From: Octopus bimaculoides
Lineage: Eukaryota
Assembly: GCF_001194135.2 (NCBI RefSeq)
Contig: NC_068992.1
Location: 63,163,515-63,207,091 of the forward strand
DNA: 43,577 nucleotides
Reading direction: 5' to 3'
Shown: positions 1 through 43,473 of the stretch, in pieces
Numbering within the stretch: position 1 is the stretch's first letter
Layout: each line of letters begins with the position of its first letter
Notes under the pieces: generated by a model
Databases searched by the model: none
Told to the model about the DNA's origin: nothing
Seen by the model: only the letters and a program-made list of their open reading frames with translations
Made by a program: the position numbers and the translations under genes

Positions 1-2002
1 ATATATATATATATATATATATACTTGCATAGATATATGTATGTGTGTGCGTGCATGTGTGCATATGTGTATGTACATACATACCTATGTATGTATATGT
101 ATATATTTATACATACATATACATACAAAATTCCGTGCTGCATCGTGGAATTAAGGTAGCCATTCACATTTTAAACACCAAAAGGCACAAGTAAAATCGT
201 TACTAAAGGATGCAAATCAGCACCAGCATTGCTAGAAATAAGAATCAAAACAAATCTTGATTGTCTTTTGTCTTAGGTCTACACAGCCAAGGCTCTCCAA
301 GGGCTAAAGAATAACAGATCATTCAACAATGGTACAGTCCTAAGTCTTTACAGCAACTCGGTTTAGTTTCCAGCTGAATGACTTATCCGTTTTATCGAAG
401 GCTTTAATATCCTTGCGACAAGTCGACAGGTAAACATGTATAAGATAGCTAGCCATGCTAGAAATAATAGTAACCAAATCACTTCAAGCCAGACCTTGCT
501 GCGTTATAAAAGAAAGTTTATGTTTGATACTGTGGTCTTGTGTTCACTTTATCGAAGGAAAAGCCACGGATGGAATGTCCCCTGGTATATGTCTGCTCTG
601 TGAGAGCTGACTGGAGACTAAGCACCAACAACAATAATACATTCGGGAAAGGCATTAATGTCACACAAGCTTCATTCAACACCAACACCACCACTACTCT
701 TACCATCTTCATCACCACTCTCTCCAGTATTATCCTAAATAAGTCGATTGAATGGGAAGGCCTCTACGTAATCGTTTGACCTGTTAAAAATAGCAGGTAA
801 TCTCACTGAAATCTCGGTCTACCGTCTTATAAAGGGATTTGTTGAATAATGTATTAATGAAAAAAATGATCACGGCTGGAATGTCTTTAATGATAAGTTT
901 TCTCCTATTAAAGCTGACCTGGGGCTAAACAGCTGCACCAAGAACAATTGTAAGATCCAAAACTTGTTTAGACCTCGTGTCTGCTTAAATGAAGCAATCG
1001 CTAGTCTCTTCCTGTTGTATTTTATCAGTGTAAACAACGACCGGAAGCGGATATAGTATTCCCCTGTATGAAATATAAAAAGAAACTATAAACAAAACTA
1101 AACCACAACACACCAAAACACAAAATAAAATATCACCGGAAACATCTCGAATTAACAAGGGAAGCAATAACCGAACTGCCGAAAGGAGTCACAGTGCGGT
1201 CGTTCGGGCTGCGTGACATCGAGACATAACAGTGAAACATCTCTCAAATTACAATCTACATTCTTTAAATAGAGAACAACACAGTGCCTCAGAGTTTCCT
1301 TTCACCGGTGAATCGCATGTCATATAAAACTACATTATTAAAAGGGAATGAGCTGTTCTCTGATGACGAAAAACAACAGCTGTCAGATAGTCATGCTATA
1401 ATAAGCCAGAACATATTGGGAATGAATCGATACATTAATGTTTCAATTCTTGCTGTTCTGCGTGCCATCATCGTCATGCAGCCCGCTTTTTACAGTTCGT
1501 CGATGACACTACAACAAATGCATTCCCGATTAAGCGTGAGTTCTCAGATGAAGTCATAGCGTTATTTTATGCTGGCTTTGCTATAGCGCTTCCTTAGCAG
1601 AGATACTAGCGAGGTTTAGCATTACCTTCCCGAACTGGAATGCTCTTGGCCCACGAGGAGCTCATCCGTCGTTTGACAGGTCTTGTTTTTAGTCTTCTTG
1701 GGTGTCCAGATACCCTCCTCACAAGAGTGGCAAGCTATTCAAGTGGGGGAGCCTGTTTAGTTACTGACCACTCAACCATGAAGTTGATAGTACTGATTTA
1801 CACGGTACCGGTAGCAGGTCCCATCGGCCTATGGTGAGAGCCCTGACCTGACTGGATTCTCATTAATTATTTTCTGTTTGCATCTCATTAATTATTTTCT
1901 GCTGGACGGACATCAGAATGCATCAGTAAATAATTTGTTCGCTGATTTTTATGAACAAGAGTTCGTGCTCTTGTGAAATTCCTCGATCTAGTTGGGAAGC
2001 TT

Positions 2003-2045
2003 TGACTGAAGAGACAAAATGAGGTCGAAACACCGCAGTGTCTCA
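2003..2045 (+). ncRNA. Type I hammerhead ribozyme, complete catalytic core
   Basis: TGA-CTGAAGA-GAC(aaaatgag)GTC-GAA-ACAC(cgca)GTGT-C^TCA: all core nucleotides present, stem II 3 bp, stem III 4 bp, GUC cleavage triplet (C17 = 2042), stem I 3 bp proximal. Confidence 0.85.
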
Positions 2046-2307
2046 CTGAACCAGTGTGTTAGGAACACATAATCTAAAGGGAGGAGGTATTCTCCAATAG
2101 GAAGTACCAACAGCGATCTGGCATTCATGCGTGGATGTAGCAGCACGTGTTAAAAATCAATAGACACGTTATTATTTGGATTCTCGCAGTTGTGTATGCA
2201 CCTCATTAATTATTATCTGATTGACAGACATCAGCACGTACTAGCAAATAACCTGTTCGCTGACGGCTATCAACAAGAGCCTTTATTCTTGCTAGATGCG
2301 TCGGCCA

Positions 2308-2377
2308 GTGTGATACTTTGACTGAGGAGACACACAATAGGGACGAAACACCACGATGTCTTAAAGTTCCCTTACAC
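2308..2377 (+). ncRNA. Type I hammerhead ribozyme, second copy with weakened stem II
   Basis: CTTTGA-CTGAGGA-gacacacaatagggac-GAA-ACA(ccacga)TGT-C^TTAAAG; stem I 6 bp plus distal helix gtgtga(2308-2313)/ttacac(2372-2377); C17 = 2360. Confidence 0.75.
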
Positions 2378-2883
2378 CAGTGAATCACTTGTGGTATGAA
2401 CATTTTTTGTCTCACAGATGGTGTTCTCTGCTGACGGAAAACAACAGCGATCAGAGGATCACGTTCGAATTTACCAGAACGTATTAGGAATAAGAAGATA
2501 AGTTATTGTATGGATTCTCACTGTTCTGCGTGCAGCCCATGAATTCTTTGAGACGTCTTAATGCGTTATCCATATCGGCGGAACCCATAGATCTGTTGTA
2601 AAGTAATTTATTAGCCCTGTTACCTTAAAACCTTAAAAACAAATTCTCCACATTCCAAAAGGAAGCAACAAAGTTATTTAAAGTGCCACAACAATTTTAG
2701 GGGACCAGGTACGATTTCAGTCGATAAATGCCAAGTCCCATAAACTTTGCAAGACCGACACAGGAAGTGAGAAATAAAAAAATATGTTTATACTATGAAG
2801 ACCTAAATTAATGTTCTTCTTGTGTTCTTCCTCTCATGTAGGACATTCCTCAAATATCAGATTTGAAGACAGACAGCTTACTG

Positions 2884-3215
2884 CCATCATCATCATCATC
2901 ATCACCATCATCATCATTACCTTCATCATCATCATCATTTGCAACATCATCATCATCATCATCATCATTAGCATCATCTCCGTCACCGTCGTTATGAGTG
3001 CCATCCACACCATCATCGTCATCATTATCATCATCACCATCATCATCATCATCATCATCGTCATCATTATCATCATCATCATCATCATTGCAGTCATCAT
3101 TCTCCGCCTCTCTTTCCCCTCCTCCTCCTCCTCATCATCACCATGACCAAAGTCTCCGTCACTGTCAACATAAACGTCATCATCGTCATCGTCATCATCG
3201 TCGCCATCCATCATC
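2884..3215. repeat. Compound (CAT)n/(CAC)n/(CCT)n trinucleotide microsatellite
   Basis: Directly visible; explains the poly-I/S/H/M ORFs. Confidence 0.95.
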
Positions 3216-3623
3216 AACAACACCATCCTTTCTACTGCTGCTATTACTACCGTTTTACCATTACCAGTTCCTAATTACCGTGACAGAACGAATTCAATTA
3301 AAGATAGAATTCCACTGCCAAAGTATACTTTACTTACACGTCCCACCCGCAAACCTCTCTGCCTGTCTACTGATCTCTCTTTTTTCCTCTTCTTCTCCCC
3401 TTCTCTCTCTCTCTCTCTCTCTCTCTCTTCCTTCCCCCTATTCATCTCTCTAATAACTCGCTGCTACCAAATTTGGTGCTACCTCTTCTTCCATAACGTA
3501 AACAATTAGTTTTTGTTGAATGTATATAGGACTTTTACACCAACACACACGCACATATATATACCTACAAACGTACACATACGCACACATGCACACACAC
3601 ATACACACACACACACACAAATG

Positions 3624-4159: not shown

Positions 4160-4867
4160 GTTTATTGACACGGTTCAAAGCCAGCAACTTTGAGATGAGG
4201 GGCTGGTCGATATAAACGACACCCAGTACTTGACTTACTTTCGTTTTTGATTCCATTTGGGAGAAAGGTGTAGTTGATCTCGGTAGGATTTGAACTTAAA
4301 ACGTGAAGTGCCCGAAGAAATACCGTAATCTTATTTTTGCCGACATTTTATCGAGTCTTCCAGCTTGCTGATCTTTAATGATTTTAAATTTAGCCATCGG
4401 CCCCAGCATTGAGTATTACTAAATTTTATCGACACCGAAAATATAAAAAGAAATGTTGCCACTGGCGTGATTTGAACTAACTGCAAAGCCGAGAGAGATT
4501 CTTTTTCCGACGCCCTGTCGATTCTACCTGCAAGCCGCCTGGTCATACGGGTTTCAAATTTTGGCACAAGGCCAGCAAGTTCGTGGAAGGGCGTAAGTCG
4601 ATAACATTGACCTCGTTGCTCAAGTGGTTCTTATTTTATTGAATCAGAAAGGATGAGATGTAAAGTCGACCGCGGCAGCATCTGAACTCAGAATGTAAAG
4701 ACGGACGAAATGCCTTTAAGCATTTTGTCCAGCGTGCTAATGATTCTGCCAGCTCACCGTCTTAAGACGCCTTCTGGTATTGCTTTCCAATAGGTACAAT
4801 TCCAGCAAGTTTCGTGAAAGGGTTTTAGTCGATATCATCTCCCACAGTACTTGACTGGTACTTTATT
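4160..4867 (-). mobile_element. Nest of ~3.5 copies of SINE family 2 (tRNA-like head, central gcctttcatcctttcggggtcgataaa block, (ATT)n tail)
   Basis: Best copy 4550-4768 matches 6628-6838, 15652-15853 and 42414-42600; the minus strand has a B-box-like gagttcaaat. Confidence 0.8.
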
Positions 4868-6627: not shown

Positions 6628-6838
6628 ATCTTTTCTACTGGAAGCACAAGGCCTGAAATTTTGAGGTAGAGGACTAGTCGATTAGATCGATCCCAGTGCG
6701 CAACTGGTACTTAATTTATCGACCCCGAAAGGATGAAAGGCAAAGTTGACCTCGGTAACATTTGAAACGTAAAGACGGACGAAATGCCGCTAAGTATTTC
6801 GCCCGGCGTCTAACGATTCTGCCAGCCCACCGCCTTAA
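6628..6838 (-). mobile_element. SINE family 2, near full length, embedded in (TAA)n
   Basis: Similarity to the other in-window copies; flanked by TAA tracts. Confidence 0.85.
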
Positions 6839-12803: not shown

Positions 12804-13181
12804 TTGTTATTCTTCGGAATGGTCATTATTTGTTTTCTCGCCAAATAAACACACGCACTGTATATTCGTTCTTCACTCGTTTCTCATTGTTCTTATTTTT
12901 TCTTATGTCCATTGTCTGGAAAAATATTTCGTCACATATCTCTGACCTCTTCAGCGACTCTTCCAGCCACGTGTATCCTCCTGTTCTGAGAATGGACTTA
13001 ACAGGACAGGGGAGAAAACACGTAGATGAAAGAGTCATGAAGAGATCACGGGTGTGTGACGAGAGATTTCCAGACAATGGACATAAGATAAAATAAGAAC
13101 AATAATAAACGAGTGAAGAATGAATATACAGTGCGTGTGTTTATTTGACAAGAAAAAAATGACCATTCCGAAATATAACAA
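12804..13181. mobile_element. ~380-bp foldback/MITE-like palindromic element
   Basis: The left arm ttgttattcttcggaatggtc...gtccattgtctgga... is the reverse complement of the right arm ...tccagacaatggac...gaccattccgaaatataacaa; the inner region is also partly self-complementary. Confidence 0.9.
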
Positions 13182-23380: not shown

Positions 23381-23669
23381 TATACATATGTATGAATTTT
23401 GTACGACTCCCTTATTCTTTCAATCTTTCTTTCTTTCTATCAGCCCCTTCACACTTCGTTCTGTCTACTTTTCTTTCTTTCATTCCCCCTCTCTTTATTA
23501 TACCTTTATAATTAATTATTATTAGCAATTGCATGACAATAATTAATAAAATATTTTAGATATTGCAAAACTATAATCAAATTATTGTGCATAAGCTTTA
23601 ACAACAAAATCTTATATGGACCCCCCCCCCCGCAAGGGACATATGGACACCAGTTGAGAAGCTCTGGTG

Positions 23670-24110
23670 TAGATCTATCAGGGATTTTGGCAAGATATTA
23701 AATAGCTTTGGGCCTTTGAATCCGAAACTATTGCAATACCTGGTCCTTACTCTATAAGCACTGAGTAGGACCTTTGGAAGAGTGCAGCGGCACCCTCTGC
23801 GGATGCTGTTATAGCTTTCGATGCCGAAGTTTGGTGCCAACCCCTCTAGAATCTTTCATTTCATCACCGCATATCTACACTCTTTTTGCATCTTGGGAAT
23901 TATAGATGTAATTACTTCACTCTCTCCCAGTGCCTAAAGTGTTTCATAGATGCAATTTTCTTGGCATAGCATCGCTCAAGTGCCTCAAGTTCCGCAACTG
24001 ATTTGACACTAAGAGGGTAACAACATTTGAGAACAGTTTTCTAGAGTTTGAGGACAAATATCCTCCATAGGACCAGCTTAAGACCAGCCCTTCGCCTCCT
24101 CATTACCACC
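23670..24110 (-). mobile_element. CR1/L2-group LINE ORF2 C-terminal fragment
   Basis: ORF 23598..23840 gives PNFGIESY...RTRYCNSFGFKGPKLFNILPKSLIDLH; homologous to 27110-27816. Confidence 0.85.
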
Positions 24111-39452: not shown

Positions 39453-42400
39453 GCACACATATATGTACATGTGTGTGCATATATGTGCATTTGTATATAA
39501 GACTCTACGTATTCAGCGGACGATGCGTAATTTCTTGTATCTTTAACAATTTTACATCTGCTAAAATTTCCGTCTTTCTTCCGATATTCTTCTCCAGGAA
39601 TGGTATGACCTGCGGCTGACATGGAATCCTGAGGACTTTGGCGGAGAGACCATGCTCCATATTCCATCCGAAGACCTTTGGAGACCCGACATCGTTGTCT
39701 ACAACAAGTTAAGTCCTTTCCTTTCTTCATCTCTCTCATATTTTCTGGGTTTTCCTTTTCTTCTCCTTTATTTTCTAATTAGCATTTCCTTTCCCTCATC
39801 CTTTCTTTCTCTCCGATATCATGTCTTTTTAGATTCTTTAGTTTTTCCGATGTTGTACTATGCTTGGTTTTTTTTAACTTTCTTCTACAATTTCATGTAA
39901 CTTTCGACTTATTTCTTCTTTCTCTGTCTTTCTTCGTCTGTTTCCCTCTATGTATTTATCTCTTATTTATCTACTTATATATTTTTTGCTTCTTTGTCTT
40001 ACGCTTTGTTCGTTTGTTTTGTCGATTTGTTTTGCGTTTATTTCTTGTTGGTGTTTTTTCTTCTAAAACTTTCAAAACTGTTGTTCGCTAACAGCAATAC
40101 GGAAGAACTTTTGTGCAAACTTTAAAATAATCGACTAGCCCCTTCCCCTAAAATTAAGTACTTGTTGCGTATTGAGGTTGATCTAATCTACTGGCCCCTC
40201 CTCCCAAATTTCTAGAGTAGAAAAGAATATCTTCTGTTTCCACAAACGCATAAAAAAAATAGAAAAAAAAACGGGGGCGGGGAAAAACACCTCTAATTAT
40301 TTATTACTAATAAAATACAGTTTTCATTGCATTTTCTTCAGATAGCTTTTAAATGACTGTGATGTAATCACTGTAAAATACGACTTAGACATGTTTTTTT
40401 TTTGTTTTTTACCGTGACTTCATCTTCTGCTTCTACAAACGCCTCAAATTATGAAAAAATATCTTAAATATTATTATTTAGCGAATTCAGGAAATTTTCC
40501 ATGTAGATGTAAATTGCTGCACACCCCCATCCCTCCTTATGGAGGGACGGGGGGGTGCTGTAATTATAGCAAATAAATAAGTAGAGGCGATTTTTTCCGC
40601 ACGTTTTCTATTTTTCGATGCATTTCTTGAGACAGAAGGTTTCACAGAGCTCTAAGATTCTACACCATTTATTTTGATGTCCATTCACAACTTTCCTGCA
40701 CTGTTCCCATCACGAAATTGAAAACCGTGAAAAAACGTTAGCCCACTACTGAACACTAATATATACACATGCACACAGAGAAATATATAAATCCTGAACA
40801 ATCTTGAGATTCAAGTTTATAAAAATACATGTTTATATATGTATGAATTTGTGTGCATTGGGTAAACTTCAACAGAGCATTACTTAAATTTTCTCACCGA
40901 CATTGAATACATCCCGTAATTTTTTTAAATATGATTCAGAAATATAGATATAAAATCAATATATTCATATATATTTTCTTTCTTCTTTTCTTTCTCTTCT
41001 TGTTTCCAGCGCCGACGGGGATTTCGTAATCACAATGTTAACAAAGGCTCTTGTGTCGTACGATGGTAAAATAGTTTGGGAACCGCCTGCTATCTACAAA
41101 ACATATTGCCCTATAGACGTAGAATATTTTCCGTTCGATACCCAGTTATGCTTCATGAAATTCAGCTCCTGGACTTACGATGGTAACGAAGTTGACTTGA
41201 TCGACTTTTGCCACGGCACCGGTCAAACGCAAGTTGATGGCAAGGTTGTGATCGCGAATGGCATCGATATGAAAGGCTACTCTCAGAACTCTGAATGGGA
41301 AATTCTAAACGTAACATCAACTCGAGAGATCAAAACGTATCCATGCTGTCCAACACCTTACCCAATCATATTATACAACATAACAATGAGACGCATCCCT
41401 CAATTTTACACTTTGAACTTAATCATACCTTGTGTATCAATTTCGTTCTTGACTATTCTTGTATTCTATTTACCGTCCGTGAGTGGTGAGAAAATTACTC
41501 TGTCCATATCAGTTCTCTTGGCACTGACTGTATTCTTCTTGCTGCTTTCTGAAATCATTCCGCCCACTTCTCTTGTGATTCCTTTAATCTGTAAATACCT
41601 CATGTTCACTATGCTAATGGTGACGGCATCGCTATTTCTGACTGTCTACGTATTAAACGTCAATTACCGAACAACCACAACTCATACAATGTCCCAATGG
41701 GTGCGGTATTACTTTTTGGAAAGACTGCCCACTTTCCTTATGATGAAGCGACCCCGTTTCGAAGATGAGCCGCCGATTCTGCCACCGTCCAAGATGCAAA
41801 GTTTAAGTACCTTCGACGGAGAAGAACCCGTAGAAACTCGAAGCATCACACTCAACTGTAGAGGAGAGGTGCCGACATACGAGAACATGTGTCCGCACCA
41901 GACCATTGATGAACCTGACCCTGGGAAGATGGAGAAAATGCAAAGCCTTGATGACTGGACAGGTAAACTGGTGGAAGAGATGATAAGTAATGTGGAATAT
42001 ATTGCCAGCACCAAAAAAGATGTCGAAGAAGGCAGTGCTGTGAGTATAAACGTTTCTTCTTTTACTGTAGACTAAGGTGGTGAGCTGGCAGAATCCTTAG
42101 CACAAATGATTATTACAAATTATAATTTGTTTATAGTGGTCAAATATATATGTTATACATTGGCTCACTCCATCCATCAAATCGACGTTCCCTGAATAGG
42201 TGCACGCCAGGTGTTGAGGTGAACGTAGAGTAACGTGAGAAGTGTTTTACTGAAGAACACAATGCACCACGACCTCACAATCATGAGTGCAACATTGTGA
42301 CCAATAGGCCATGGGCCTTTACAAATAGTCTATATAAAATACCGATCAACTAACACCCACATCAGTATCCTCTTCAAATCGAAGCCGATAACATCGATGC

Positions 42401-42852: not shown

Positions 42853-43473
42853 TATATATGTATATACGACGGGCTTCTTTCAGTTTCAGTCTACCAAATT
42901 CACTCACAAGGATTTGGTCGGTCCGAGGAGGTTATAGTAGAATAAACTTGCCAAAGATGCCACACAGTGAGACAGAACCCGGAACTGCATGGTTGAGAAG
43001 CAAGCTTCTTACCACACTGCCACTCCTACGCCTATGTTAACAAATAATAAATAATTAACAAATAATAAATTAATTGAAATAAATTTAAAATTGCTCAATT
43101 TGTTTTCATCAGCTTACATAATAAAAATTGTTTGCAGAGAAAGTAAACTGCACATTGAAGTGCAAAAAGGGCTCTGGACCACACACTGAAATATCACATA
43201 AGACTGCATACGCAGGTCATCATATTACCGCGATTTCTCATCCCTATTCATATCAATTTTTTATTAACGTTTCTCCTTGTTCTTTTCTTCTATTTGCAGG
43301 CGGTGCGTGATTGGGCCTACATCTCAACGTTGATAGATCGATTATTCCTTTGGGTCTTTAGTGTGATTTGTACGATCGGAACCGTTGTCATTTACCTGAA
43401 TGCACCCTCACACTTTGACACTAGGCCTAGTTTAGCAGCAGGAGATTTCGTCAATCTTTCCTGCACTTTTTGA
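33906..43473 (+). CDS. CHRNA-like: Nicotinic acetylcholine receptor alpha-type subunit (Cys-loop ligand-gated cation channel), 5'-incomplete spliced gene: join(33906..33950,39598..39707,41010..42039,43300..43473)
   Basis: Four exons with AG/GT boundaries splice in frame: [15 protein letters not shown]|[16 protein letters not shown]...WRPDIVVYN|NADGDF...[15 protein letters not shown]...SSWTY...YPCCPTPY...M1-M3...|[20 protein letters not shown]...TF*. Cys-loop codons at 41107 and 41149 (13 residues between), vicinal CC at 41344-41349, M2 [23 protein letters not shown]. Exact paralogue cannot be assigned without a tree. Confidence 0.97.
34929..35026. repeat. Second copy of the HHR-core palindrome family
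   Basis: CTGACGA (34976-34982)...GAAAC-ttcgaa-GCC-actgtcaacaa; arms match 24261-24363. Confidence 0.75.
36235..36295 (+). ncRNA. Candidate type I (minimal, Penelope-type) hammerhead ribozyme in nAChR intron
   Basis: GATAA-CTGAAGA-GATG...CATC-c-GAA-AC(tcgga)GT-T^TTATC; 5-bp stem I, extended stem II with one extra C before GAAA, near-palindromic stem III ACTC(G)GAGT. Confidence 0.65.
37056..37990. other. Largest assembly gap (others include 8623-8999, 18518-18955, 26295-27049, 38940-39418)
   Basis: Runs of N, almost always flanked by (TA)n/(CA)n. Confidence 1.
38040..38800 (-). mobile_element. Penelope-like element reverse transcriptase fragment (pseudogenised)
   Basis: Minus strand with stops/frameshifts: GLYKDD..., [40 protein letters not shown] - the motif order of Penelope RT (GLYRDD...VNFLDVTL...KPY.KPN...SNHP...RIS...Y..AL...GY). 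Confidence 0.8.
39598..39707 (+). CDS. CHRNA-like: nAChR 110-nt exon (EWYD...WRPDIVVYN; loop A)
   Basis: tctccag acceptor, gttaag donor at 39708, phase 0/2; W-x-P-D-I-V-x-Y-N-N motif. Confidence 0.97.
41010..42039 (+). CDS. CHRNA-like: nAChR large exon (Cys-loop, loops B/C/E/F, M1-M3, most of the cytoplasmic loop)
   Basis: tgtttccag acceptor, gtgagt donor at 42040; corresponds to ORF 41035..42075, which merely reads through the donor to a stop. Confidence 0.97.
42414..42600 (-). mobile_element. SINE family 2 copy in the last nAChR intron
   Basis: Matches 6628-6838. Confidence 0.8.
42605..43035 (-). mobile_element. SINE family 1 copy in the last nAChR intron
   Basis: Reverse complement of the 6921-7365 architecture. 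Confidence 0.88.
43300..43473 (+). CDS. CHRNA-like: nAChR last coding exon (M4 + extracellular C-terminal tail, TGA at 43471-43473)
   Basis: tatttgcag acceptor; [57 protein letters not shown]; the DW...IDRLFLW motif is diagnostic of M4. Confidence 0.95.
   Translation, partial: AVRDWAYISTLIDRLFLWVFSVICTIGTVVIYLNAPSHFDTRPSLAAGDFVNLSCTF

What the first reader, a model, noticed from the sequence alone, without database searches (positions are those of the whole stretch)
1271..2540. Retrozyme-like tandem array: 318-bp units each carrying a type I hammerhead ribozyme
Seen: two tandem units (starts 1884 and 2202) and a partial third (1271-1485). Each full unit has CTGANGA-stem II-GAAA-stem III-GTC at the same position, with cleavage sites at 2042 and 2360, exactly 318 nt apart. 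The partial copy begins at the degenerate 3' half of the motif (gaacaacacagtgcc^tcagag, ~1288). Established: metazoan non-LTR retrozymes are non-coding tandem repeats of a few hundred bp with one type I HHR per unit; their transcripts self-process into monomers and circular RNAs and are thought to borrow Penelope-like RT. Inference: this is a cephalopod retrozyme family. The units here are strongly diverged, so it may be old, and younger copies may exist elsewhere. I do not know whether it has been described.
Basis: partly seen in the sequence, partly recalled or inferred. Interest (0 to 1): 0.9.

Follow-up and report, generated by a model that had tools for sequence, protein, structure and literature searches.

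The report
Decayed hammerhead-ribozyme repeat in octopus intron
A short tandem repeat inside an intron of an Octopus bimaculoides acetylcholine-receptor gene carries one worn-down self-cutting "hammerhead" RNA motif per copy; it looks like an old relic of a known kind of mobile element (animal retrozymes), not a new kind of thing.

Summary
Window 1845-2548 is about 2.2 tandem units of roughly 318 bp. Window 1271-1485 is a separate 5'-truncated copy. Both full units carry the complete type I hammerhead core at the same phase, with C17 at 2042 and 2360.

The motif is unlikely to be chance. A core with three stems of at least 3 bp occurs 0.007 times per shuffled window, and only once in about 198 kb of octopod DNA. 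Both motifs score below the Rfam threshold (18.9 and 19.5 bits; cut-off 34). Each copy has a broken stem, and the hammerhead fold is not the predicted minimum-energy fold.

The window is Octopus bimaculoides chromosome CM046612.1. The repeat lies in intron 1 of a nicotinic receptor alpha gene, in sense orientation.

A second locus with about 1.2 tandem units was recovered from Logan contigs. Across the three full-length units, the hammerhead is the single best-conserved segment (72% invariant against 42% elsewhere, p = 1.7e-4).

Unit-to-unit divergence (JC about 0.36-0.44) suggests an insertion tens of millions of years old.

Best reading: a fossil non-LTR retrozyme or Penelope-associated hammerhead repeat, now probably inactive. 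This is a new member of a known kind, of modest interest.

The parts
1271..1485 (+). Copy A: a 5'-truncated solo copy covering the 3' ~60% of a unit. It starts inside the hammerhead 3' half, with a degenerate core (GAAC.., GCC^).
   Evidence: 70% identical to 2347-2533. Local alignment z = 27 against shuffles. Four-way alignment.
1486..1844 (.). 359-bp spacer unrelated to the unit, with higher GC (47%). Either an insertion into, or an internal non-repeat part of, the original element.
   Evidence: Alignment to the dimer is no better than shuffles. No other copy in L001, L114 or L002. No Pfam hit and no tRNA. GC.
1845..1883 (+). Start of the array: a short 3' end of a preceding unit (TGGATTCTC...TGCAT), including a 25-bp local duplication of the unit start (1859-1883 against 1884-1908).
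   Evidence: Family D4; sequence; alignment.
1884..2201 (+). Unit 1 (318 bp).
2000..2051 (+). Hammerhead 1, type I. Core is CUGAAGA at 2006-2012. Stem II is 2013-2015/2024-2026 (3 bp). GAAA is at 2027-2030. Stem III is 2030-2033/2038-2041 (4 bp, loop CGCA). C17 is at 2042, so predicted cleavage is between 2042 and 2043. Stem I is only 3 bp (2003-2005/2043-2045).
   Evidence: Rfam Hammerhead_1 18.9 bits, E 0.33. Only structural-scan hit in the window and in 198 kb of octopod DNA. 0.007 expected per shuffled window. Hammerhead fold -2.3 against MFE -12.2 kcal/mol.
2043..2360 (+). The 318-nt monomer that double cleavage would release.
   Evidence: Distance between the two C17 positions. Fold z-score -0.25, so not unusually structured. 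GC 43%.
2202..2548 (+). Unit 2 (about 333 bp) plus the first ~14 nt of a further unit (CATGAATTCTT). The array ends here.
   Evidence: nhmmer envelope to L001 39854 = window 2548.
2315..2367 (+). Hammerhead 2, type I. Core is CUGAGGA at 2322-2328. Stem I is 7 bp (2315-2321/2361-2367). Stem II is broken (G-C, A.A, C-G). GAAA is at 2345-2348. Stem III is 3 bp. C17 is at 2360.
   Evidence: Rfam Hammerhead_1 19.5 bits, E 0.22. All 14 core positions identical to hammerhead 1. Hammerhead fold +2.6 against MFE -8.5 kcal/mol.
2106..2120 (+). Second conserved block of the unit (AACAACAGCGATC; also at 2440-2454 and 1375-1389). Function unknown.
   Evidence: 12 of 15 columns invariant across unit 1, unit 2 and the second-locus copy.
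1929..1943 (+). Third conserved block (AATAAYYTGTTYG; also at 2247-2261). Function unknown.
   Evidence: 11 of 15 columns invariant across three copies.

Best explanation
This is the fossil of a small, non-coding, hammerhead-bearing tandem-repeat retroelement. It is of the kind called animal non-LTR retrozymes, which are thought to be non-autonomous partners or derivatives of Penelope-like elements.

It sits in intron 1 of an Octopus bimaculoides nicotinic acetylcholine receptor alpha gene, in the same orientation as the gene.

Inferred mechanism when the family was active:
1. A transcript spanning two or more units folds one type I hammerhead per unit and cuts itself after GUC.
2. This releases ~318-nt monomers with 5'-OH and 2',3'-cyclic phosphate ends.
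3. A host tRNA ligase (RtcB type) circularises them.
4. A retrotransposon reverse transcriptase copies the circle round and round, so new insertions are head-to-tail multimers.

Shown here: the tandem anatomy, the complete catalytic core at a fixed phase, a second locus with the same tandem layout, and preferential conservation of the hammerhead.

Inferred: cleavage, circularisation and reverse transcription.

The copies in this window are old and probably inactive. Unit 1 has lost most of stem I, unit 2 has lost stem II, and the solo copy is truncated.
For: - Complete core (C3-A9, G10.1/C11.1, G12-A15.1, U16.1, C17) in both units at 318-nt spacing. The only difference within the 7-nt CUGANGA box is at N7, the one free position.
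- The Rfam best-clan hit is Hammerhead_1 at exactly these sites. The reported E-values of 0.22 and 0.33 are for 4227 families. By my own arithmetic, for this one family alone that is about 5e-5 to 8e-5 per 2 kb.
- Chance rate of the core plus three stems is 0.007 per window. It is the single hit in ~198 kb of octopod DNA.
- A second locus (Logan contigs L115-L117, found through protein P0129) carries ~1.2 tandem units in unrelated flanks with an octopod SINE-like repeat.
- Across unit 1, unit 2 and that copy, the hammerhead has 33/46 invariant columns against 112/266 elsewhere (Fisher p = 1.7e-4). It is the unique maximum of 267 sliding windows.
- 76% of hammerhead pair cells are standard pairs, against 14-43% when partners are slid.
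- The defects sit in different stems in different copies, so an intact ancestor is parsimonious: stem I CTTTGA/TCARAG, stem II GAC/GTC, stem III ACAC/GTGT.
- GC is 41-43%. There is no Pfam domain and no protein homologue, so it is non-coding.
- All three local copies are about equidistant (JC 0.35-0.44). That is about 0.18-0.22 per lineage, the level reported for the Penelope/LINE expansion in Octopus (JC 0.2, about 56 My; PMC13282606).
- Penelope-like elements are present in octopus genomes (PMC13282606, PMC8967140).
- The retrozyme definition and model come from PMC7229834, PMC7761336 and bioRxiv 10.64898/2026.07.22.740005.
Against: - Both motifs are well under the Rfam gathering score (18.9 and 19.5 against 34). 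The second-locus motif is not detected at all.
- Stems are short or broken, and there is no compensatory covariation, although only 3 sequences were available.
- Nearest-neighbour energies favour other folds by 10-11 kcal/mol. Even a mosaic 'ancestral' motif is 5 kcal/mol worse than its MFE.
- The monomer is not unusually structured, whereas retrozyme circles are described as highly self-paired (PMC7761336).
- Only one extra locus was found. No copy turned up in ~175 kb of other octopod sequence, and none in two word-indexed protein searches.
- No Penelope-like reverse transcriptase or GIY-YIG ORF lies nearby.
Confidence: 0.7

Rival explanations
1. Remnant of a Penelope-like element itself. 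On this reading the units are pseudo-LTRs of a PLE whose ORF was deleted: a 5'-truncated pLTR (copy A), a short internal remnant (1486-1844), then tandem pLTRs. This overlaps with the main explanation if retrozymes are PLE derivatives.
For: - PLE insertions are typically partial tandems with a 5'-truncated upstream copy, hammerheads in the pLTRs and a 30-40-bp 'tail' at one end (PMC8557442).
- The layout here is a truncated copy, a 359-bp unrelated spacer of different GC, then 2.2 units.
- The array overshoots two full units by ~50 nt.
- Vertebrate retrozymes group with PLE pLTRs (bioRxiv 10.64898/2026.07.22.740005).
- The age matches the PLE burst (PMC13282606).
Against: - No RT or GIY-YIG signal in any ORF segment of the spacer or within about 6 kb.
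- Two units are directly adjacent with no ORF between them.
- Stem III is 4 bp with a tetraloop. PLE hammerheads are described as minimal variants with a very weak helix III (PMC7229834, PMC7761336).
- No octopus PLE sequence was available for comparison.
Confidence: 0.2
2. A SINE-like hammerhead-carrying retroposon, in the manner of Schistosoma Sm-alpha. It would be copied as a linear transcript by a LINE or PLE enzyme. The tandem arrangement would then be a local duplication and the ribozyme a passenger or transcript-trimming device, with no circular RNA stage.
For: - Copy A is a solo, 5'-truncated copy, as expected for target-primed reverse transcription from a 3' end.
- Copy A and the array end within ~15 nt of the same unit position, not at the cleavage site.
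- Conserved blocks outside the hammerhead could be internal promoter or RT-recognition sites.
Against: - The second locus is also tandem, so tandemness is a family trait.
- That copy ends at a different unit position.
- No tRNA-like or other small-RNA head.
- No poly(A) or simple-repeat tail at either 3' end.
- No significant target-site duplication. The best candidate is 7 nt; by my own arithmetic on the search space, about 0.17 such matches are expected by chance.
Confidence: 0.08
3. A chance hammerhead-like motif inside an ordinary tandem duplication of intron sequence, with no ribozyme history.
For: - Sub-threshold Rfam scores.
- Weak stems and unfavourable folding energy.
- No covariation.
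- Loose core-only patterns occur elsewhere in the window by chance.
Against: - Expected 0.007 per window for the core plus three stems.
- All 14 core positions are identical in units that are otherwise ~66% identical (P about 0.003).
- The same unit occurs at a second, unrelated locus.
- The hammerhead is the best-conserved segment of the unit (p = 1.7e-4).
Confidence: 0.02
4. An exapted intronic ribozyme. Because the hammerheads are in sense orientation in intron 1, they would cut the receptor pre-mRNA and tune its expression, as proposed for conserved intronic hammerheads of amniotes.
For: Sense orientation inside a 61-kb first intron of a neuronal receptor gene. Unit 1 keeps a complete core with all three stems.
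Against: - Both copies carry stem defects, and the flanking units decay at an apparently neutral rate, about the same as the solo copy.
- Conservation is explained by family history.
- The orthologous intron in other octopods could not be fetched because the gene range is too long.
Confidence: 0.03

Closest known systems
Metazoan non-LTR retrozymes (Cervera & de la Pena 2020, PMC7229834; review PMC7761336)
   Same: Non-coding tandem repeats of 150-450 bp, GC below 45%, one type I hammerhead per unit. They occur from dimers upward, in genomes that also hold Penelope-like elements. They are already described in a mollusc (mussel) and reported as present in many invertebrate phyla.
   Different: The copies here are degenerate (below the Rfam threshold, broken stems) and the monomer is not predicted to be highly self-paired. 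No circular RNA, cleavage or high copy number has been shown. No octopus or other cephalopod family is mentioned in those papers or their held supplement.
Hammerheads of Penelope-like elements (Cervera & de la Pena 2014, cited in PMC8557442; bioRxiv 10.64898/2026.07.22.740005)
   Same: Type I hammerheads in tandemly arranged terminal repeats of a retroelement, with 5'-truncated upstream copies. PLEs are present in octopus, with a burst of similar age.
   Different: No RT/GIY-YIG ORF is associated here. Helix III is a normal 4-bp hairpin, not the minimal PLE type.
Newt satellite 2 and Schistosoma Sm-alpha hammerhead repeats (from my own knowledge; newt repeats are also discussed in PMC7229834)
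   Same: Units of ~330 bp with one type I hammerhead, either tandem (newt) or dispersed SINE-like (Schistosoma). From memory, the stem II and loop 2 region here (..CAATAGGGAC GAAAC) resembles the Schistosoma motif (..CAAAUAGGAC GAAAC).
   Different: Those ribozymes are active and abundant. The resemblance was recalled, not tested, and no sequence similarity outside the core was examined.
Rfam RF00163 Hammerhead_1 loci counted in the giant squid genome (235 loci, PMC6962438)
   Same: Type I hammerheads in a cephalopod genome.
   Different: Those loci passed an Rfam-based annotation and were reported only as a count, with no repeat context. The octopus motifs here do not reach the Rfam threshold.
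Conserved intronic hammerheads of amniotes (from my own knowledge; mentioned as isolated motifs in PMC7229834)
   Same: A hammerhead in sense orientation within an intron of a protein-coding gene.
   Different: Those are single and highly conserved. This one is a decaying repeat copy.

Membership tests
Metazoan non-LTR retrozyme | Head-to-tail tandem repeats with a unit of about 150-450 bp | tested here: met
   About 2.2 units of ~318-333 bp at 1845-2548. About 1.2 tandem units at a second locus.
Metazoan non-LTR retrozyme | One type I hammerhead per unit, with a complete catalytic core and type I topology (stem I open) | tested here: met
   The core and the order CUGANGA, stem II, GAAA, stem III, GUC are present in both full units at the same phase. 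The stems are eroded: I/II/III are 3/3/4 bp in unit 1 and 7/broken/3 bp in unit 2.
Metazoan non-LTR retrozyme | Low GC (below 45%) and non-coding | tested here: met
   GC 41-43%. No Pfam domain in any ORF segment. No protein homologues except another copy of the repeat.
Metazoan non-LTR retrozyme | Multiple copies dispersed in the genome | tested here: inconclusive
   One further locus found. None in ~175 kb of other octopod DNA. No cephalopod genome could be searched at the DNA level.
Metazoan non-LTR retrozyme | Self-cleavage of the transcript at the hammerhead | not testable with these tools
   In silico only. The hammerhead fold is 10-11 kcal/mol above the MFE, which suggests the present copies are poor or dead.
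Metazoan non-LTR retrozyme | Expression as unit-length linear and circular RNA | not testable with these tools
Metazoan non-LTR retrozyme | Stable, highly self-paired monomer RNA | tested here: not met
   The 318-nt monomer 2043-2360 folds at -77 kcal/mol, z = -0.25 against shuffles. This was tested on a decayed copy, not a consensus.
Metazoan non-LTR retrozyme | Co-occurrence with Penelope-like elements in the host genome | not tested
   Literature only: PLEs are annotated in O. vulgaris and O. bimaculoides (PMC13282606, PMC8967140). None was seen in the loci read here.
Rfam RF00163 Hammerhead_1 | Covariance-model score at or above the curated gathering score (34 bits) | tested here: not met
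   18.9 and 19.5 bits. No hit at gathering in the window or in L001. The second-locus motif is undetected.
Penelope-like element (pLTR) | Repeat flanks an ORF with PLE reverse transcriptase and (for EN+ elements) a GIY-YIG endonuclease | tested here: not met
   No Pfam hit for ORF segments between window 382 and 7512, including the 1486-1844 spacer.

The most novel reading that the evidence does not exclude
Octopus genomes may hold younger, intact members of this family that are processed into abundant ~320-nt circular RNAs. Alternatively, the two sense-oriented hammerheads in intron 1 may still cut the nicotinic-receptor pre-mRNA in neurons, releasing a 318-nt RNA (2043-2360) that is circularised. 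Either would give cephalopods a ribozyme-made circular RNA class, or a ribozyme input into a neuronal gene. Nothing here excludes this, because no genome-wide DNA search and no RNA data were available.
Probability: 0.12. Interest if true: 0.55.

Novelty: new member of a known kind. Interest (0 to 1): 0.3.

Why it matters
The value is mainly annotation. It adds octopods to the animals that carry hammerhead tandem repeats. It gives a dated fossil of roughly the age of the Penelope/LINE burst, and seed sequences for a genome-wide census (units 1884-2201 and 2202-2534, plus the Logan copy).

If intact members exist, they would predict a class of small ribozyme-processed circular RNAs in cephalopod tissues. 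They would also offer a further test of the proposed link between retrozymes and Penelope-like elements. The copies in this window are most likely inert intron filler.

Tried and rejected
- Rfam at gathering threshold on the window, L001, L114+L002 and L118+L115: no hits.
- Tandem Repeats Finder: misses the array.
- Exact look-ups of window ORFs: nothing.
- Word-indexed protein search with the unit 2 minus-strand ORF: nothing, not even self. The search with a 3-sequence profile returned only P0129 itself.
- Representative search hit P0128: rejected. It is an ORF through a 70-bp satellite on a metagenome contig, with no hammerhead.
- Metagenome pattern scans. The family-specific pattern gave 0 hits. 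The looser pattern gave 111 stretches, of which at least 48 are well-formed but unrelated type I hammerheads. Only one weak nhmmer match was found, confined to the motif.
- Orthologous intron. The O. vulgaris gene range is over 100 kb, so no DNA was returned. The Argonauta locus has no copy. The O. sinensis contig is too short.
- Paralogue locus in O. vulgaris (84 kb): no copy and no hammerhead.
- 1486-1844 as a diverged unit: rejected (z about 0).
- Target-site duplications: none significant.
- tRNA-like head: none.
- Search for a PLE ORF near the array: none.
- Suspected LINE tails at 23.6 and 27.4-27.8 kb: not confirmed by Pfam.
- Hammerhead-like core at 12919-12954 (-): no stem III and an offset stem II, taken as chance.
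- Identity of runs SRR11869385/-90/-91: not recoverable from the literature.
Full report
**What is in the sequence.**
- Window 1884-2201 and 2202-2534 are two head-to-tail copies of a ~318-333-bp unit. They are 65% identical by BLAST, 66.5% by MAFFT and 71.6% by global alignment.
- The array starts at about 1845. There it has the last ~40 nt of a unit, including a 25-bp local duplication of the unit start.
- The array ends at about 2548, ~14 nt into a further unit.
- A separate copy at 1271-1485 matches the 3' 60% of a unit (70% to unit 2; z = 27).
- The 359 bp between them (1486-1844) is not detectably related to the unit. It has higher GC (47% against 41%).
- Tandem Repeats Finder misses the array because the copies are too diverged.

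**The hammerhead motifs.**
- Both full units have, at the same phase, the linear order that defines a type I hammerhead: stem I 5' strand, CUGANGA, stem II hairpin, GAAA, stem III hairpin, GUC, stem I 3' strand. C17 falls at 2042 and 2360, 318 nt apart.
- Unit 1 has stems I/II/III of 3/3/4 bp.
- Unit 2 has a good 7-bp stem I, a broken stem II (A.A at 10.2/11.2) and a 3-bp stem III.
- The solo copy begins within the 3' half of the motif and has core changes (GAAC, GCC).
- Rfam finds nothing at gathering threshold. In a permissive search of 1000-3000, the best hammerhead-clan hits are Hammerhead_1 at 2000-2051 (18.9 bits, E 0.33) and 2316-2366 (19.5 bits, E 0.22), against a cut-off of 34. Those E-values are for 4227 families. 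For the single pre-specified family they would be about four thousand times smaller; that is my arithmetic, not a tool output.

**Is the motif more than chance?**
- My own scan for the core plus at least 3 bp in each stem finds only 2006-2042 on either strand of the window.
- A slightly looser version of the scan (stems II and III needing only 2 bp) also finds only that site in ~198 kb of octopod sequence.
- 300 dinucleotide shuffles of the window give 0.007 hits per window.
- All 14 core positions are identical between units that are otherwise ~66% identical (P about 0.003).
- The one difference within the 7-nt CUGANGA box is at N7, the position free to vary.

**Where it is.**
- The large ORF at 41035-42075 is an exon of a nicotinic acetylcholine receptor alpha subunit.
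- It is 100% identical to Octopus bimaculoides XP_014781747.1.
- The window equals bases 37307-80883 of locus L001, from chromosome CM046612.1 of assembly GCA_001194135.2.
- Exon 1 lies 27 kb upstream of the window and exon 2 at window 33906-33950. The repeat is therefore in the middle of the 61-kb intron 1, with the hammerhead strand in the sense of the gene.
- No reverse transcriptase, endonuclease or other domain is encoded in or around the repeat. There is no tRNA-like sequence.

**Relatives.**
- No cephalopod genome could be searched at the DNA level with the tools on hand.
- There is no other copy in the 90-kb L001, in an 84-kb O. vulgaris paralogue locus or in a 23-kb Argonauta locus.
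- The O. vulgaris orthologue could not be fetched because its gene range exceeds 100 kb.
- A word-indexed protein search with the longest ORF through unit 2 found nothing.
- A full HMMER search of 1.84 billion protein representatives, using a profile of the unit 1 and unit 2 minus-strand translations, gave two hits.
  - P0128 is an ORF through an unrelated 70-bp satellite and was rejected.
  - P0129 (114 aa) is clearly homologous (IAVVFR..RT, CLLSQSYPIRS.NLT, QTNYL). It is encoded on three near-identical Logan contigs from runs SRR11869385, -90 and -91.
- Those contigs carry about 1.2 tandem units of the same family in flanks unrelated to the window. They end in a SINE-like repeat that occurs many times in both Octopus loci, so the source is an octopod or close relative. 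The species could not be established.
- The hammerhead of that copy is also dead: CUAAGGA (G5 to A), stem II GAC/GCC, H17 = A. It is invisible to Rfam.

**Conservation pattern.**
- With three full-length copies from two loci, 33 of 46 hammerhead columns are invariant, against 112 of 266 elsewhere (Fisher p = 1.7e-4). The hammerhead window is the single highest of 267 sliding windows.
- The best 15-nt block of the whole unit is TTGACTGARGAGACA.
- On the hammerhead structure, 76% of pair cells are standard pairs, against 14-43% in slid controls. There are two one-sided compatible changes and no compensatory ones. Three sequences are too few to expect more.
- The defects lie in different stems in different copies. 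The most economical ancestor therefore had all three stems: I CTTTGA/TCARAG, II GAC/GTC, III ACAC/GTGT.
- Uneven conservation among dispersed copies is what selection on the active source elements would leave.
- Two further blocks, AACAACAGCGATC and AATAAYYTGTTYG, are nearly as conserved and remain unexplained.

**State of the present copies.**
- Nearest-neighbour energies put the hammerhead fold at -2.3 against an MFE of -12.2 kcal/mol for motif 1, and at +2.6 against -8.5 for motif 2.
- A mosaic of the best stems still loses by 5 kcal/mol to a competing GAGACA/UGUCUC helix.
- Such energies ignore hammerhead tertiary contacts, so they are suggestive only.
- The 318-nt monomer is no more structured than shuffles (z = -0.25).
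- I conclude that the copies here are probably inactive, with unit 1 the only candidate for residual activity.

**Age.** The three local copies are about equidistant (JC 0.35, 0.36, 0.44). If the units were identical at insertion, that is ~0.18-0.22 substitutions per site per lineage. This is the level at which a Penelope-like and LINE expansion (JC 0.2, about 56 My) is reported in Octopus (PMC13282606). The inference is an insertion tens of millions of years old, before the O. bimaculoides/O. vulgaris split.

**Comparison with what is known.**
- The anatomy is that of metazoan non-LTR retrozymes: tandem, ~300 bp, low GC, non-coding, one type I hammerhead per unit. These are described in coral, mussel and axolotl, and reported as present in many invertebrate phyla (PMC7229834, PMC7761336).
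- A 2026 preprint argues they derive from Penelope-like element termini (10.64898/2026.07.22.740005).
- I found no paper describing such a family in cephalopods. The giant squid genome paper does list 235 Rfam hammerhead_1 loci (PMC6962438).
- Membership is supported for the structural features. It is not met for the Rfam threshold or the self-paired monomer, both tested on decayed copies. It is untested for cleavage, circular RNA and mobilisation.

**Limits.**

**Verdict.** This is a real but eroded hammerhead-bearing tandem repeat: a new member of a known kind, of modest interest.

Noticed in passing
window 33906-33950, 39565-39708, 41005-42042, 43300-43470 (+): Exons 2-5 of an Octopus bimaculoides neuronal nicotinic acetylcholine receptor alpha subunit gene (XP_014781747.1). 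Exon 1 lies 27 kb upstream of the window, so the whole window up to 33.9 kb is intron 1.
   Followed up: yes
window 1859-1883 and 1884-1908: A 25-bp tandem duplication of the unit start (CTCATTAATTATTTTCTG, 18/18 identical) at the 5' edge of the array. It is far more similar than the units are to each other, so it is a later local slippage or conversion event.
   Followed up: partly
window 2885-3088 and 3175-3227: A long imperfect CAT/TCA trinucleotide array just downstream of the repeat. It produces spurious sub-threshold C/D-box snoRNA hits.
   Followed up: no
window, many sites (e.g. 13.8, 17.1, 18.6, 26.7, 37.5, 39.2 kb): Runs of N (assembly gaps) flanked by TA/CA microsatellites. The same microsatellites give dozens of sub-threshold mir-297, mir-3149 and mir-1277 hits, which are low-complexity artefacts.
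   Followed up: partly
window 4594-4752, 6672-6825 and many other sites in L001 and L114; L115 bases 1-172: A SINE-like repeat of ~170 bp is present many times in both Octopus loci (70-81% identity). It is also at the end of the Logan contig that carries the second copy of the hammerhead repeat.
   Followed up: partly
window 23601-23855 (-) and 27355-27847 (-): ORF fragments that look by eye like C-terminal tails of non-LTR retrotransposon proteins (..LEPNFG..RTG..C.VPKV..). Pfam gave no hit.
   Followed up: partly
window 12919-12954 (-): CTGAAGAG-GTCA..TGAC-GAAA: a hammerhead-like core with an offset stem II and no stem III. Taken as chance.
   Followed up: partly
L005, L008, L010, L017-L023, L027 and other loci among L003-L113 (JGI/TARA marine metagenome contigs): A recurrent, well-formed type I hammerhead (AAGTTATA-CTGAYGAGACTTMARTAGTCGAAACAC..GTGTC-TATAACAA; stems I/II/III about 6/4/5 bp) occurs on many marine metagenome contigs. 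It is unrelated to the octopus unit outside the motif. Its genomic context was not examined.
   Followed up: no
L118 1573-3809: A 70-bp satellite (32 copies, 98% matches) on an ENA metagenome contig is read through by called 'genes' of ~350 aa. It is an example of satellite ORFs polluting protein databases, and it gave a spurious hit to the repeat profile.
   Followed up: yes
window 2106-2120, 2440-2454, 1375-1389; L115 (reverse complement) ~360-375: The block GTTCTCYGATGACGRAAAACAACAGCGATCA is almost as conserved among copies as the hammerhead. In copy A it reads CTGATGACGAAA, a hammerhead-like core without a stem II. Its role is unexplained.
   Followed up: partly
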